The notes beneath the pieces are model-generated. The model saw only the letters and a program-made list of their open reading frames with translations, had not been told where the DNA came from and ran no database searches. Both the position numbers and the translations under genes were made by a program. From Octopus sinensis (lineage: Eukaryota), in assembly GCF_006345805.1 (NCBI RefSeq), contig NW_021829229.1:1-6789 (forward strand): a stretch of 6,789 bases of DNA, read 5' to 3'. This document shows, in pieces, positions 968 to 5,232 of the stretch; the first letter of the stretch is position 1; each line of letters begins with the position of its first letter.

Positions 968-1259
968 AAATAAGGATAAGATCGTTAATTTAAAAATAAA
1001 ATAACGATTTTATCAAGTGGTCAGCATGGAAAAAATAACCTTCAAATGTAATAATTATTAAAATTATAAATTAGGATATCTACGAGATACCACCATGCTG
1101 AAAATAGCAGCCATGATCTGACTCTAAAACCACCATAATTGTCCATATATCAACACGTGTTGATATATGGACAATTATGGACAATTATGGTGGTTTTAGA
1201 GTCAGATCATGGCTGCTATTTTCAGCATGGCGGTATCTCGTAGATACCCTAATTTATAA

Positions 1260-1267
<8 letters not shown>
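968..1267 (-). mobile_element. Unclassified fold-back element, copy 1 (long palindrome + flank + terminal stem-loop)
   Basis: The reverse complement of 1003-1046 aligns to 5171-5212 (36/45 columns by hand), and the palindrome arm ends are similar to those at 5035-5096. That the element is mobile is inference. Confidence 0.55.
1056..1267. repeat. Near-perfect loopless palindrome, 101-bp arms
   Basis: Centre CAACAC|GTGTTG at 1156/1157. Arms match at 99/101 (A1076/C1247 and A1092/C1231 mismatch), plus a 10-nt tandem duplication ATGGACAATT (1167-1186) in the right arm. Confidence 0.97.

Positions 1268-1305
<38 letters not shown>
1266..1305. repeat. (TA)n microsatellite
   Basis: Direct reading. 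Confidence 0.97.
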
Positions 1306-1308
<3 letters not shown>

Positions 1309-1309
<1 letters not shown>

Positions 1310-1592
1310 CCTTCTCCTCAACTTACGACCGAGTCCCGTTGCGACTGACAGGTCGTAAGTCGATCCGGTCGTATGTCGGATTTATATGTTTCTACACTAT
1401 GTTCATTCAAAATCAAATAATGCTTGAAAGCGACTAATGGAGAGACAGTAGAAGACAATGGATGCCTAGGTGTGCGTTGCCAGATTCTGCCATAGTTATC
1501 TATGCGCAACTGTCCAACGTCCGAAAATCGATTAAAAAAATTTCTTTTTTCATTTCCTTATTTTTTTGTGGTCATTAGTCGAGAAGAAGGTG
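1309..1592. mobile_element. pogo/Tigger-like (Tc1/mariner superfamily) MITE, about 280 bp
   Basis: TIRs: CCTTCTCCTCAACTTACGAC (1310-1329) vs reverse complement of 1571-1590, CCTTCTTCTCGACTAATGAC (16/20). Flanking TA at 1307-1308 and 1593-1594. Internal subterminal copies GGTCGTAAGTCGA (1351-1363) and GGTCGTATGTCGG (1367-1379). Superfamily assignment is from recalled TIR style. Confidence 0.65.
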
Positions 1593-1825
1593 TATATGTA
1601 TATATCTATGTGTTGGTGTCTTTGTGTCTGTGTTTGTTCCCCCAACCTCACCGCCTGACAACCGGTATTCGCATAAACCGACGGAATAAGTTCTGGCCTT
1701 TAAAAAGTAAGTCCTGGGGTAGATTTGTTCGGCTAAAACAAAAAAAAAAAAACGCTTCGTGGCGGTGACCCAGCGTAGCCCCATTCAAATGACTAAAACA
1801 AGTAAAACATGAAAGGAAAAAAAGA
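1593..1825 (+). mobile_element. SINE family A, 3' half (degraded, internal deletion)
   Basis: Colinear with about 6222-6470: TGTCTGTGTTT..CCCC, TGACAACCG, GAATAAGT, GATTTGTTCG, AAATGACT(A/G)AAACAAGTAAAA. About 40 bp missing near 1670; A-run expansion at 1740-1752. Confidence 0.8.
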
Positions 1826-2238
1826 TGAGATATCAGGAAGAACTCCCTAAGAATACGAAGTGGATATTGTCTCAAGCTGCTCTAAATATAAAAGACGGGT
1901 TAATAATACATGAAAAGATACTAATTTTAATGGGGACTTTCATCTTTAGATGCTCAAAGTATAAATCGGATGCGTAAAATATGTTTCAAAATGTCGGCCG
2001 AAACTTATGCAACGTGGTCTAAAACCCAGAAGTTAGAGGCCTATGCAATTAGGAAAATAAGGCTTAGCTAACGAATAAATATTGCGTAACTGGGATTAGC
2101 ATTTATTTGTGAAGTCAAACTAAACTCTTAATTAATCAAAGATCCCGACTGTGCTTCAGAGGTGACTGATGAGACCTAATGGCAGTAGTAAGGGATGGTG
2201 GCTAATTATTATTACAGACTGTACTTACAGATATGAGA

Positions 2239-2296
2239 ATATATGTGTATTATATATATGTACATATATACATACATACAAACACACACACACACG

Positions 2297-2346
<50 letters not shown>

Positions 2347-2403
2347 TACACACACATACGTATATAAATGTATGTATGTATGTTTGTATGTGTGCATGTT
2401 TGT
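2239..2403. repeat. Compound microsatellite TA/CA/TATG
   Basis: Direct reading. Confidence 0.95.
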
Positions 2404-2405
2404 TT

Positions 2406-2623
2406 AGGGCAGCGAGCTGGCAGAATCGTTAGCACGCCGGGTGAAATGCTTTAGTAGCATTTCGTATTCCTTCATGTTCTGAGTTCAAATTGCACCGAGG
2501 TCGACTTTGCCTTTCATCATTTCGTGGTCGATTAAATAAGTACTAGTCAAGAACTGAGTCGATGTTCTCGGCTATCCCTCTTGGCCCAAAATTTCCGGCC
2601 TTGCGCCTAAACTAGAAAGTAAT
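2406..2623 (+). mobile_element. tRNA-derived SINE, family B
   Basis: A-box-like TGGCAGAATCG (2418-2428) and B box GAGTTCAAATT (2481-2491). Central CGAGGTCGACTTTGCCTTTCATC..GTCGAT.AAATAAGTAC module. Possible TSD ATGTTTGT (2396-2403/2624-2631), ambiguous in low-complexity DNA. Confidence 0.75.
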
Positions 2624-2768
2624 ATGTTTGTATGTATGCATTTACGTGTGCGTGTGTGTGTGTCTATATGTGTGTGTAAGTGTGTATGTACGTATGGATG
2701 TACATATGCATACACACGCACTTACACATACATGTATGTATATATACGCATAAGTATGTAAGTGTGCG
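2624..2768. repeat. Compound TG/TATG/CA microsatellite
   Basis: Direct reading. Confidence 0.9.
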
Positions 2769-2844
2769 AGCACAATTTCCCACAATGCATCAGTAGGACT
2801 CAGTGTATGTAGGTGAGTCGTATTTTCAAAACTGTGTCTATGTA

Positions 2845-3060
2845 TCAAAAGAGGATCAACGGCCCTTCTCCAACCATAAGATCATACGGCCGGTTTCCCG
2901 GATTCTGTGACATTACCCCAAAAGACTGGACGCCGGGCCATCGACTGATTACTTGTTTTTGCCAGGTGATTAATTTGGAACGACATGAGAAGAATCCAGG
3001 AATGGAAACCACCATCTTCGGATCATAGATATAGTACTATCCACTAAGGTACGCAAAGCC
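2845..3060 (-). mobile_element. Probable degraded tRNA-derived SINE, family D
   Basis: Minus strand begins GGCTTTGCG, with A-box-like TACCTTAGTGG (3051-3041) and B-box-like GGTTTCCATTCC (3010-2999) at tRNA-like spacing. The 3' boundary is uncertain. Confidence 0.5.
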
Positions 3061-3077
3061 AACGAGACAACGTATGA

Positions 3078-3187
3078 ACATGTGTGTTTGTGTGTATCTT
3101 AGTGTGTGTTAGTATATATACATATACGCATGTATGTATATACACACACACACATACATATACACAGACACGCTTGCGCGTGCATGT
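3078..3187. repeat. Compound TG/TA/CA microsatellite
   Basis: Direct reading. Confidence 0.9.
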
Positions 3188-3219
3188 TTGAGGGTGGTGT
3201 GCCTATATGTGTCTATGGT

Positions 3220-3600
3220 GGAGGCGCAGTGGCCCAGTGGTTAGGGCAGCGGACTCGCAGTCGTAGGATCGCGGTTTCGATTACCAGAGCGGGTGTTGTG
3301 AGAGTTTATTGAGCGAAAACACCTAAACATCCACGAGGCTCCGGCAGTGGGCGGTGGCTAATCCCTGCTGCAACAATTTCACCACAACTTTCTCTCACTC
3401 TATCTTCCTGTTTCTGTTGTACCTGTATTTCAAAAGGGCCAGCCTTGTCACACTCTGTGTCAGGATGAATCTCCCCGAGAACTACGTTAAGGGTACCCGT
3501 GTCTGCGGAGTGCTCAGCCACTTGCACGTTAATTTCACGAGCTGGCTGTTCCGTTGATCGGATCAGCTGGAACCCTCGTCGTCGTAACCGACGGAGTGCC
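3220..3600 (+). mobile_element. tRNA-derived SINE, family C, apparently full length
   Basis: A box TGGCCCAGTGG (3230-3240), B box GGTTTCGATTACC (3273-3285), GC-richer body. Candidate 14-bp TSD TATGTGTCTATGGT (3206-3219) / TATATGTCTATGAT (3604-3617), 12/14. Confidence 0.85.
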
Positions 3601-4128
3601 ACGTATATGTCTATGATAATGACATCTTTTAGTTCTGTATTCAAATAAAGATGCCAAATGAACAGTCTGCAAAATAAAATGGCAGATTCTTTGAAATATA
3701 TATATCATCGGCCACAGAGAAATAAAACCGCAGCATCAGTTCGAACTCACAAAAGTCAGAGAAAGACATTTATAGGTGATAATAAATCCTGAACAATAGA
3801 CACACATAAACAGGCTCAAAACAGAGACATACAAGCAGCAAAGACTAACCCGCCCCCAACACACATACACAAACACAATCAGACAATCATGCGCATTTCA
3901 GTATATTTTGCCGATTGTTAGGAAACAGTAGCAGGAGGAAGAAGGGAGTGTGACCATGGAATATTGTCTGCGGCTGTTTTAGGGAATGGGGTAAAGTGCA
4001 AAGGAGGGGATATATTAACAACTGTTTAATAGATAGTTTAATAAATAGTTTAAATGGACTGCTTGATAATATTCTGTAGGGTTGGCGGGGGAGCACTCTA
4101 TTTATTTAAAGTTGAATGAAGAATATAT

Positions 4129-4214
4129 ACTGTGGTATTCCTCCTGACTTGGAATCTCTATCTCTCCCTCTCCACTCTCCCTTGTTCTCTCTATTTATCT
4201 GTCTGTCTGTCGGA

Positions 4215-4245
<31 letters not shown>
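4129..4245 (+). repeat. Direct repeat copy 1: 28-bp unique core + (CT)/(GTCT) microsatellite
   Basis: ACTGTGGTATTCCTCCTGACTTGGAATC (4129-4156) is identical to 4867-4894; CTCTCCCTCT and CCTTGTTCTCTCTAT are also shared. Confidence 0.92.
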
Positions 4246-4263
4246 AATATATATATATATTTG

Positions 4264-4301
<38 letters not shown>

Positions 4302-4621
4302 CATACACACAAACACATGCACATATATATGTATATATATAAATAATATAAAATACTATGTATGCGTGCGTATATATATATTAATATAAACTCACAGGTA
4401 CATAAACATGTGCGTGTGCGCGCGTGTATATATATGTAAATATATATATATGTAATATATATACATATATAATATTTACATATATAATATGTATATATTT
4501 ACATATATATATGTATATATATACATATTATATACATATATATATTATATTATATATTCTATAATATAATTATATATATATATATATATTATATATATAT
4601 ATATATTCATATATTTATATA
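4246..4621. repeat. AT-rich low-complexity (TA)n/TACA tract
   Basis: Direct reading. Confidence 0.95.
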
Positions 4622-4866
4622 TGAAGGTTAACTTCCAAATTAGGTTGGTAGGGGTACACATGTTTAGCGGGTACTCTATTCGCTTTTACCGGTTAATAAT
4701 GCTGGCTAACCTCCGTGAGTATAGAAAAACTCCAGTAAGTTTATTTTACAACCCTCAGTAGATCTTCACATCACATCGGTAAATCCATATGTCTCTATAG
4801 AGTGTGCATGTCGTCGGTTGCGAAGATATAATAATAATTATTATTATTATTTCTTCTCTCTTACCC

Positions 4867-4944
4867 ACTGTGGTATTCCTCCTGACTTGGAATCCCTCTC
4901 TCTCCCTCTTCCTTGTTCTCTCTATCTATCTATTTATCTGTCTG

Positions 4945-4979
<35 letters not shown>
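4867..4979 (+). repeat. Direct repeat copy 2
   Basis: See 4129-4245; offset 738 bp. Confidence 0.92.
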
Positions 4980-4997
4980 TATATATCTATATATATA

Positions 4998-5037
<40 letters not shown>
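4980..5037. repeat. (TA)n microsatellite, imperfect
   Basis: Direct reading. Confidence 0.95.
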
Positions 5038-5038
<1 letters not shown>

Positions 5039-5161
5039 AACAACTTACACAAGGGCAAAAGAAAAAATTTTCTAATGCCTAATATGCCGAAAATAGTCTA
5101 TTTTCGGCATATTTGGCATTAGAATTTTTTTTTCTTTTGTCCTTGTTTATAGTTGTTTATA
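5035..5161. repeat. Palindrome with 1-nt loop, 62/64-nt arms
   Basis: Centre T5097 (GAAAATAG-T-CTATTTTC); the inner 16 bp are perfect; 57/64 columns match by hand alignment. Confidence 0.95.
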
Positions 5162-5232
5162 AATTTAACCTTTAAAGGTATTTTTTAATATGCTGGCCAT
5201 TGATAGAACGTTTTTTCGAAAAATTGTATCCT
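5035..5232 (+). mobile_element. Unclassified fold-back element, copy 2
   Basis: Same order of parts as 968-1267 read on the minus strand: (TA)n, palindrome, homologous flank, GATA...TATC stem-loop, microsatellite. Confidence 0.55.

What the first reader, a model, noticed from the sequence alone, without database searches (positions are those of the whole stretch)
968..5232. Two long loopless palindromes are inverted copies of one unclassified fold-back element
Seen: reading 1267->968 (minus) and 5035->5232 (plus) gives the same order of parts: (TA)n | palindrome | short spacer | conserved flank | terminal stem-loop | microsatellite. The flanks align TTTGAAGGTTATTTTTTCCATGCTGACCACTTGATAAAATCGTT (revcomp 1003-1046) vs TTTAAAGGTATTTTTTAATATGCTGGCCATTGATAGAACGTT (5171-5212), 36/45 columns. 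The arm starts align (TATTAAAATTATAAATTAGGG vs TATAAACAACTATAAACAAGGG, 17/22, using the arm consensus of copy 2), and both arms carry ATGCYGAAAATAG (1095-1107, 5084-5096). Arms within a copy are much more alike (99/101; 57/64) than the copies are to each other. Inference: a non-autonomous mobile family whose palindrome is either re-created per copy (fold-back/template switch) or homogenised arm-to-arm. The asymmetric layout, with the flank on one side only, does not fit a standard MITE.
Basis: partly seen in the sequence, partly recalled or inferred. Interest (0 to 1): 0.8.

Follow-up and report, generated by a model that had tools for sequence, protein, structure and literature searches.

The report
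Truncated fold-back copies of Penelope-type retroelements
The two palindromes are real, but they are ordinary insertion scars of two related, high-copy, ribozyme-bearing non-coding retroelements of the Penelope-like type, which often insert as a truncated copy joined head-to-head to a second, inverted truncated copy inside TA microsatellites.

Summary
Both near-loopless palindromes exist, and their one-sided flanks are significantly similar (0 of 1000 shuffles reach the score).

They are not one "fold-back element". They belong to two related families, A (493-nt unit) and B (475-nt unit). First-look candidate counts in this 2.72-Gb genome were at least 2019 for A and 1328 for B, and neither consensus is palindromic.

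Both units carry a type-I hammerhead ribozyme motif at the same position. Copies elsewhere show:
- strong 5' truncation
- partial tandems
- a fixed 3' end
- TA-repeat flanks
- in 19 of 29 tail-anchored B loci, an inverted 5'-truncated copy abutting the 5' end

The outer end of the inverted arm lies at unit position 380-396 in 41 of 45 fold-backs. Inner breakpoints vary per copy, so each palindrome was made at insertion.

This is the published PLE insertion signature: both target strands prime reverse transcription, from two start sites. Both window copies are truncated and lack the ribozyme. I could not identify the autonomous partner. Verdict: new members of a known kind, of moderate interest.

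The parts
885..965 (.). (TG)n microsatellite next to the tail end of copy 1 (3 nt, TAT, lie between)
   Evidence: Tandem Repeats Finder; sequence.
968..1055 (-). Copy 1 (family A): the one-sided 'tail', unit A positions about 479 to 389. It includes the conserved hairpin at 975-1014.
   Evidence: blastn against unit A: 965-1157 = A(287-479), 98%. Hairpin -12.4 kcal/mol, z -6.9. Homologous to the copy 2 tail.
1056..1156 (-). Copy 1: tail-bearing ('direct') arm, unit A positions 388 to 287. It is 5'-truncated at 287, so the hammerhead motif (unit positions about 178-238) is absent.
1157..1267 (+). Copy 1: inverted 5'-truncated arm, unit A positions 287 to 388. It contains a 10-nt duplication (1171-1190) and ends at the second start site, where (TA)n begins.
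   Evidence: blastn 1176-1267 = A(297-388), 98%; arm alignment.
1265..1309 (.). (TA)n array abutting the tail-less end of copy 1
   Evidence: The same is seen at 40 of 48 tail-less ends in other loci, against 6.7% of control positions.
4980..5034 (.). (TA)n array abutting the tail-less end of copy 2
5035..5096 (-). Copy 2 (family B): inverted 5'-truncated arm, unit B positions about 394 to 325
   Evidence: blastn 5028-5096 = B(325-394), 89%.
5097..5097 (.). Single-base centre of palindrome 2
5098..5160 (+). Copy 2: tail-bearing arm, unit B positions 323 to about 387. It is 5'-truncated, so the hammerhead motif is absent.
   Evidence: blastn 5096-5250 = B(323-475), 93%.
5161..5232 (+). Copy 2: one-sided tail, unit B positions about 388 to 462, with a decayed hairpin
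5232..5284 (.). (TA)n array abutting the tail end of copy 2

Best explanation
Each locus is a single insertion of a non-coding retroelement, most likely mobilised by the reverse transcriptase/endonuclease of a Penelope-like element (PLE). Copy 1 belongs to family A and copy 2 to family B.

**The source units (shown).** Unit A is 493 nt and unit B is 475 nt. They are colinear and each carries a type-I hammerhead ribozyme motif.

**Proposed insertion steps (inferred from the copy catalogue and from published PLE biochemistry).**
1. The endonuclease cuts both strands of an AT-rich or (TA)n target.
2. One 3' end primes cDNA synthesis at the outer start site, just past a conserved hairpin.
3. The other 3' end primes at a second site about 85-105 nt further in. 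This site is a UA-rich patch at unit position about 388.
4. Both cDNAs run toward the RNA 5' end and stop early.
5. The two cDNAs are joined head to head.

**Product.** (TA)n | inverted truncated arm | centre | truncated arm | tail with hairpin | microsatellite. When both cDNAs stop at the same position, the result is a loopless palindrome, as in this window.

The window copies are dead fragments without the ribozyme.
For: **Copy number and unit structure**
- Both families are high-copy, with first-look candidates of at least 2019, 1395, 1328 and 922 in four searches.
- Consensus units are non-palindromic and occur as partial tandems, for example in L005, L011, L025, L039, L045 and L048.

**Hammerhead motif**
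- The motif begins with CTGACGAGG at unit position 186 in both families.
- Rfam Hammerhead_1 matches family A over the full model, at E = 0.0016 in a 211-nt stretch.
- The cores CTGACGA and GAAA are the majority form in both families.
- Five of the first six helix-I pairs differ on both sides between A and B, yet remain Watson-Crick pairs.

**Fold-back catalogue (45 fold-backs)**
- The outer end of the inverted arm lies at unit position 380-396 in 41 of 45.
- All 15 fold-backs in the arm-anchored sample have exactly one tail.
- Tail-less solo copies ending near 388 also exist: L067, L068 and L079 in family A, and L017, L039 and L049 in family B.
- In 16 of 45 the inverted arm contains sequence absent from the direct arm, so the two arms must come from independent priming.
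- 19 of 29 tail-anchored B loci carry an inverted arm.

**Target**
- (TA)>=4 lies within 25 nt outside 40 of 48 tail-less ends and 46 of 89 tail ends, against 6.7% of control positions.

**PLEs in this genome**
- GIY-YIG endonuclease frames are abundant: 4846 first-look candidates, 149 scored, some in open frames of 760-883 aa.

**Literature**
- PLE insertions show 5' truncation, partial tandems, an adjacent inverted 5'-truncated copy, a tail at one end only, and a (TA)n bias (PMC8557442).
- A purified PLE protein cleaves and extends both strands. It starts reverse transcription at two internal sites, and the sequence between them is the tail (PMC11167929).
- Animal hammerhead repeats have been proposed to be non-autonomous PLE derivatives (PMC7229834; bioRxiv 10.64898/2026.07.22.740005).
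Against: - No autonomous PLE sharing sequence with units A or B was identified.
- The family A hammerhead hit scores 23 bits, below Rfam's gathering score of 34. Family B gave no Rfam hit at all and rests on my manual structure.
- Position 10.1/11.1 of helix II is non-canonical in both families. Ribozyme activity is untested.
- The tail is about 85-105 nt here, against 30-40 bp reported for PLEs.
- Near-symmetric fold-backs are over-represented in family A: 9 of 26 against 4.3 expected, P about 0.009. Independent stops do not predict this.
- Target-site duplications could not be read, because the flanks are microsatellites.
Confidence: 0.78

Rival explanations
1. Snap-back. A single cDNA primed at the tail end folds back on itself, or the polymerase switches to the nascent strand and copies it. 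A palindrome results, and its far end is joined to the (TA)n target by microhomology at the AT-rich patch near unit position 388.
For: - It predicts loopless, perfectly symmetric palindromes like the two in the window.
- It fits the excess of near-symmetric fold-backs in family A (9 of 26 against 4.3 expected).
- The arms share private variants in copy 1 and in L008.
Against: - In 16 of 45 fold-backs the inverted arm reaches more than 10 nt further 5' than the direct arm. It therefore contains sequence that the first cDNA never had.
- Snap-back gives no reason for copying to stop at unit position 380-396 in 41 of 45 cases.
- It may still contribute to the symmetric subset.
Confidence: 0.12
2. 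The families are SINE-like elements mobilised by a microsatellite-targeting LINE, such as the Dong/R4 clade that is abundant in octopus. The inversions would arise by classical twin priming.
For: - The copies show 5' truncation, a fixed 3' end with a hairpin, and a simple-repeat tail.
- 5' inversions are frequent.
- Dong-R4 LINEs are reported as abundant in octopus genomes (PMC13282606, PMC8967140).
Against: - Both units carry a hammerhead motif.
- Copies occur as partial tandems that continue past the 3' end into the next unit.
- Fold-backs obey a one-tail rule, and tail-less copies end at a second start site.
- The inverted arm duplicates the direct arm instead of continuing upstream of it.
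- No pol III boxes and no tRNA-like head are present.
Confidence: 0.07
3. The families are DNA-level fold-back or long-inverted-repeat elements (or MITEs). Palindromes with different centres would arise from central deletions in these. Alternatively, the palindromes are assembly artefacts.
For: - A few loci have nearly complete head-to-head arms (L036, L037).
- The window is a small unplaced contig.
Against: - Most copies are solo units or partial tandems with recurrent 5' ends: family A at about 88 and 104, family B at about 139.
- One arm always lacks about 85-105 nt that the other arm has.
- No terminal inverted repeat is part of the consensus.
- The same architecture recurs on chromosome-scale contigs with fixed outer boundaries.
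Confidence: 0.03

Closest known systems
Non-autonomous derivatives of Penelope-like elements (PLEs) and their characteristic insertion structure (Craig et al. 2021, PMC8557442; Frangieh et al. 2024, PMC11167929)
   Same: - Heavy 5' truncation.
- Partial tandems, like pseudo-LTRs.
- An inverted 5'-truncated copy directly at the 5' end.
- An extension (the 'tail') at one end only.
- Two alternative reverse-transcription start sites.
- Insertion into AT-rich or (TA)n DNA.
- A hammerhead motif in the non-coding unit.
   Different: - The tail is about 85-105 nt rather than 30-40 bp.
- No coding partner sharing sequence with these units was found here.
- The second start site is a UA-rich patch that could pair with a (TA)n primer. 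The studied lizard PLE starts at a site with no homology to the target.
Animal non-LTR 'retrozymes': tandem repeats with type-I hammerhead ribozymes that are expressed as circular RNAs (Cervera & de la Pena 2020, PMC7229834; Li et al. 2026 preprint, 10.64898/2026.07.22.740005)
   Same: - Non-coding and AT-rich.
- Units of a few hundred nt with one type-I hammerhead motif.
- High copy number.
- Partial tandems.
- Co-occurrence with PLEs in the same genome.
   Different: - In the loci sampled, copies are mostly dispersed single or truncated units and fold-backs, not multi-copy direct tandems.
- Units (475-493 nt) are longer than the 150-450 bp reported.
- Self-cleavage and circular RNA are untested.
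- The text search of PMC7229834 found no mention of octopus or cephalopods.
L1 twin priming (5' inversion of LINE-1 insertions; recalled from memory, Ostertag & Kazazian 2001)
   Same: A second target-strand 3' end primes on the same RNA. The result is a 5' inverted segment joined head to head to the 3' segment.
   Different: In L1 the inverted and direct segments are essentially adjacent, non-overlapping parts of the RNA. Here they overlap extensively and form inverted duplications, and the second priming site is fixed.
Foldback elements and MITEs
   Same: Both are short and non-coding, carry long inverted repeats, and have AT-rich targets.
   Different: Here the inverted repeat is not part of the family consensus, its inner ends vary from copy to copy, and the two ends are not equivalent.

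Membership tests
PLE-type non-autonomous retroelement | An inverted 5'-truncated copy lies adjacent to the 5' end of a direct copy | tested here: met
   Both window copies show it. So do 45 fold-backs in 90 loci, and 19 of 29 tail-anchored B loci.
PLE-type non-autonomous retroelement | An optional 'tail' extension is present at only one end, reflecting two reverse-transcription start sites | tested here: met
   The inverted-arm outer end lies at unit position 380-396 in 41 of 45 fold-backs. All 15 arm-anchored fold-backs have exactly one tail. Tail-less solo copies end near 388. The tail is longer (85-105 nt) than the published 30-40 bp.
PLE-type non-autonomous retroelement | High 5' truncation and partial tandems (pseudo-LTR-like) | tested here: met
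   5' ends are variable. Units continue past the tail into the next unit in L005, L011, L025, L039 and L048. The window copies themselves are not tandem.
PLE-type non-autonomous retroelement | AT-rich or (TA)n target bias | tested here: met
   (TA)>=4 flanks 83% of tail-less ends and 52% of tail ends, against 6.7% of control positions.
PLE-type non-autonomous retroelement | Sequence shared with the pseudo-LTR or 3' end of an autonomous PLE in the same genome | not testable with these tools
   GIY-YIG frames are abundant, some in open frames of 760-883 aa.
Animal non-LTR retrozyme | A type-I hammerhead ribozyme in the unit | tested here: inconclusive
   Family A gives a full-length Rfam Hammerhead_1 match at 23 bits (gathering score 34), E = 0.0016. 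Family B gives no Rfam hit, but it has the conserved cores and three helices, and five of the first six helix-I pairs co-vary with family A. The window copies lack the motif.
Animal non-LTR retrozyme | Direct tandem arrays that yield self-cleaved monomers and circular RNA | not testable with these tools
   Only partial tandems were seen. No transcriptome data were available.
Foldback element / MITE | Terminal inverted repeats are part of the family consensus, the two ends are equivalent, and target-site duplications have a fixed length | tested here: not met
   The consensus units are not palindromic. Inner breakpoints vary, and one arm always lacks the tail. Target-site duplications cannot be read in the microsatellite flanks.
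tRNA-derived SINE | A tRNA-like head with pol III A and B boxes | tested here: not met
   ARAGORN found no tRNA in the window. No tRNA-like head is visible by eye in the printed unit consensus sequences; the consensus sequences themselves were not scanned for tRNAs or pol III boxes.
Helitron / Helentron non-autonomous element | A 5' TC and a 3' hairpin followed by CTRR, with insertion at AT or TT and precise ends | tested here: not met
   A 3' hairpin exists, but the ends read ...CCTTAT / ...CCTATATTAG and their positions vary. 5' ends are variable.

The most novel reading that the evidence does not exclude
The genomic copies may record PLE integration in vivo in unusual detail.

- **One tail per fold-back.** This points to a fixed division of labour between the two target strands. 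One strand would start at a protein-defined site beyond the hairpin. The other would start where a (TA)n primer can pair with a UA-rich patch.
- **Excess of exactly symmetric palindromes.** This suggests that both cDNAs run off the same broken or processed RNA 5' end, so a single RNA is copied twice by a dimeric complex.
- **Microsatellite growth.** If primed ends also grow TA repeats, these elements would help seed (TA)n microsatellites in this genome. In support, 83% of tail-less ends and 52% of tail ends abut (TA)n, against 26% of solo 5' ends.
Probability: 0.25. Interest if true: 0.55.

Novelty: new member of a known kind. Interest (0 to 1): 0.35.

Why it matters
- **Annotation.** The result turns an apparently unclassifiable "fold-back" repeat into an interpretable one. 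It supplies two unit consensus sequences that an annotator of this microsatellite-rich genome could use to mask thousands of copies. (From memory only, the genome resembles an octopus; this was not tested.)
- **Mechanism.** It gives a natural dataset of breakpoints, tails and symmetry. These bear on the still poorly understood integration mechanism of Penelope-like elements and on the proposed PLE origin of animal hammerhead repeats.
- **Scope.** It does not reveal a new kind of element.

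Tried and rejected
- **Whole-window and 10-locus Rfam scan.** The listed hits (150 of 165) were all microsatellite hairpins matching miRNA models, which are artefacts.
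- **tRNA scan of the window.** Nothing found.
- **Rfam on family B hammerhead regions.** No hammerhead hit.
- **Minimum-free-energy folding of the hammerhead segments.** It recovers helix I (A) and distal helix II (B) but not the full three-way junction, so it is uninformative.
- **Genome search for the B arm.** I gave locus coordinates in the wrong orientation, so the query was the B tail plus unique flank. It only re-found tails and returned no loci.
- **Pfam scan of the longest open frames in the fetched loci.**
  - L010 gave an RVT_1 reverse-transcriptase match, apparently unrelated to families A and B.
  - L044 has a decayed RT-like fragment with a YIDD motif upstream of a B copy, but no Pfam hit. 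It shows no demonstrable link to family B.
- **Helitron, MITE/foldback, SINE-plus-LINE twin priming and assembly artefact.** All considered; see the rival explanations and the membership table.
- **5' ends and the hammerhead cleavage site (A 232, B 234).** I looked for a pile-up of 5' ends there. By eye there are only a few ends nearby and no clear peak.

Full report
**1. Observation**

The window is the whole 6789-nt contig C5700 of a 2.72-Gb eukaryotic assembly. The assembly is rich in microsatellites and SINE-like repeats.

- *Palindrome 1.* Arms 1051-1156 and 1157-1272 give 102 matches in 116 columns. The only gap is a 10-nt duplication at 1171-1190, and the centre lies at 1156/1157.
- *Palindrome 2.* Arms 5029-5096 and 5098-5166 give 60 matches in 70 columns around a single base at 5097.
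- *One-sided flanks.* The reverse complement of 968-1055 against 5161-5232 scores 41. Dinucleotide shuffles give 17.5 +/- 2.4, and 0 of 1000 reach the observed score.
- *Arm-to-arm similarity between the two copies.* This is not significant on its own; 45 of 1000 shuffles score as well.
- *Terminal hairpin.* It is strong in copy 1 (-12.4 kcal/mol, z -6.9). It has decayed in copy 2, although the family B consensus still folds.

**2. Genome-wide picture**

The copy 1 half (968-1160) gives at least 2019 first-look candidates, with scored hits 95-98% identical. The copy 2 half (5097-5232) gives at least 1328, at 92-95%. I call these families A and B.

Most copies are not palindromes. Consensus units built from the fetched loci are 493 nt (A) and 475 nt (B). 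The two units are colinear, about 50% identical overall and about 72% identical in the tail block.

The units continue past their 3' end into the next unit in several loci, forming partial tandems. Examples are L005, L011 and L025 for A, and L039, L045 and L048 for B. Recurrent 5' ends lie near A 88 and 104 and near B 139.

**3. Hammerhead motif**

Both units carry CTGACGAGG at position 186.

Rfam's type-I hammerhead model aligns over its full length to family A at L002:1739-1797 on the minus strand. The score is 23 bits against a gathering score of 34, with E = 0.0016 in a 211-nt search. Family B gives no Rfam hit.

Across 17 A copies and 14 B copies:
- the cores CTGACGA and GAAA are the majority form;
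- all three helices can be drawn in both families;
- five of the first six helix-I pairs differ on both sides between A and B, yet stay Watson-Crick.

The 10.1/11.1 pair of helix II is non-canonical in both families, and activity is untested. The predicted cleavage site lies after A 232 and B 234. Both window copies are truncated at unit positions 287 (A) and 323 (B), so they lack the motif.

**4. Anatomy of insertions**

I mapped every copy in 90 loci plus the window onto the units. This gave 45 head-to-head fold-backs.

- *Outer end of the tail-less arm.* It lies at unit position 380-396 in 41 of 45 fold-backs.
- *The other arm.* It continues about 85-105 nt further, through the hairpin, to the element's 3' end.
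- *One tail per fold-back.* In the arm-anchored sample, which is not biased for tails, all 15 fold-backs have exactly one tail. Solo copies occur both with a tail (8) and without one (3, ending near 388). By my arithmetic, independent tail use would give 15 of 15 with a probability below 1e-5.
- *Inner breakpoints.* They vary from copy to copy. The inverted arm is shorter than the direct arm in 17, within 10 nt of it in 12, and longer in 16.
- *What the longer class excludes.* An arm cannot be copied from a partner that lacks the sequence, so this class excludes pure snap-back copying.
- *Symmetry.* Near-symmetry is over-represented in A (9 of 26 against 4.3 expected, P about 0.009) but not in B (3 of 19).
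- *Frequency.* 19 of 29 tail-anchored B loci have an inverted arm.

(TA)>=4 lies within 25 nt outside 83% of tail-less ends, 52% of tail ends and 26% of solo 5' ends. The control rate is 6.7%.

**5. Comparison with known systems**

This architecture is the one described for Penelope-like elements (PLEs). Published PLE features are 5' truncation, partial tandems forming pseudo-LTRs, an inverted 5'-truncated copy at the 5' end, a tail at one end only, a (TA)n bias, and hammerhead motifs in the pseudo-LTR (PMC8557442).

A purified PLE protein cuts and extends both DNA strands. It starts reverse transcription at two internal RNA sites, and the sequence between them is the tail (PMC11167929).

Animal hammerhead repeats ("non-LTR retrozymes") have been proposed to be mobilised by PLEs and derived from them (PMC7229834; bioRxiv 10.64898/2026.07.22.740005). 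Text searches of PMC7229834 found no mention of octopus or cephalopods.

PLE-type endonuclease frames are abundant in this genome. There are 4846 first-look candidates, 149 of them scored, some inside open frames of 760-883 aa. Published repeat annotations report PLEs as abundant in octopus genomes (PMC13282606, PMC8967140). That this genome is an octopus is my recollection from the sequence style and assembly size; I did not test it.

**6. Mechanism**

*Shown:* the family structure, the fixed outer ends, the one-tail rule, the variable inner ends, and the TA-repeat flanks.

*Inferred:* both strands of a cut (TA)n target prime cDNA synthesis on the element RNA. One starts at the outer site beyond the hairpin. 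The other starts at the UA-rich patch near position 388, which could pair with a (TA)n primer. Both cDNAs abort on the way to the 5' end and are joined head to head. A loopless palindrome, as in the window, results when both stop at the same position. Stopping together could reflect a shared RNA 5' end or a contribution from snap-back copying.

**7. Limits**

- The hammerhead motifs are sub-threshold or manual calls.
- Target-site duplications are unreadable in microsatellite flanks.
- Samples are the best 40 hits per query, not a census.
- Dfam and Repbase could not be consulted.

**8. Verdict**

The objects are two families of a known kind of element, and the palindromes are a known kind of insertion scar. 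I classify them as new members of a known kind, of moderate interest.

Noticed in passing
window 3-152 vs 6072-6221; 1695-1822 vs 6371-6476; also 2403-2600 and 3220-3600: Several SINE-like repeat copies lie in the window. The two repeat pairs are 71-78% identical and in direct orientation. I took 2403-2600 and 3220-3600 for further SINE-like fragments by eye from the sequence. ARAGORN calls no tRNA in the window. The same repeat type flanks many A and B loci.
   Followed up: no
window 4129-4171 vs 4867-4909: A 43-nt segment is repeated at 95% identity, 738 nt apart. Each copy is followed by a CT/TCTG-rich microsatellite and then TA repeats. The second copy leads directly into the (TA)n that abuts copy 2. 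It may be the end of another repeat family or a local duplication.
   Followed up: no
window 5463-5775 and 4247-4622: A long (ATAC)78 array, and a TA-rich tract of about 375 nt with 57-61-nt periodicity.
   Followed up: no
L017:25-712; L041:1483-2302; L085:1394-2085: Copies of families A and B abut each other end to end. The tail-less end of one lies next to the tail end of the other. This suggests repeated insertion into the same TA array or next to earlier copies.
   Followed up: partly
L070 (G000:C3:67653066-67653735): A family A fold-back with a 32-nt deletion in its tail is itself tandemly duplicated with a period of about 389 nt.
   Followed up: no
L046 (C9024) and L047 (C26): The fold-back structure and flanks are identical on two different contigs. 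This is probably a haplotig or a segmental duplication.
   Followed up: no
L044:5-949 (+): An open frame with a reverse-transcriptase-like YIDD motif decays into low-complexity sequence. It ends about 400 nt upstream of a B copy on the same strand. It gave no Pfam hit and has no demonstrated link to family B.
   Followed up: partly
Unit B about 133-145; unit A about 87-90 and 103-105: Unrelated copies share recurrent 5' ends at these positions. In L036 both arms of a fold-back end at B 139, within a natural CCATGG palindrome. These positions may mark the RNA 5' ends of the source transcripts.
   Followed up: partly
Ends of copies in 90 loci: TA repeats flank primed ends far more often than solo 5' ends: 83% of tail-less ends and 52% of tail ends, against 26%. 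Simple insertion into a pre-existing TA array does not obviously predict this asymmetry.
   Followed up: partly
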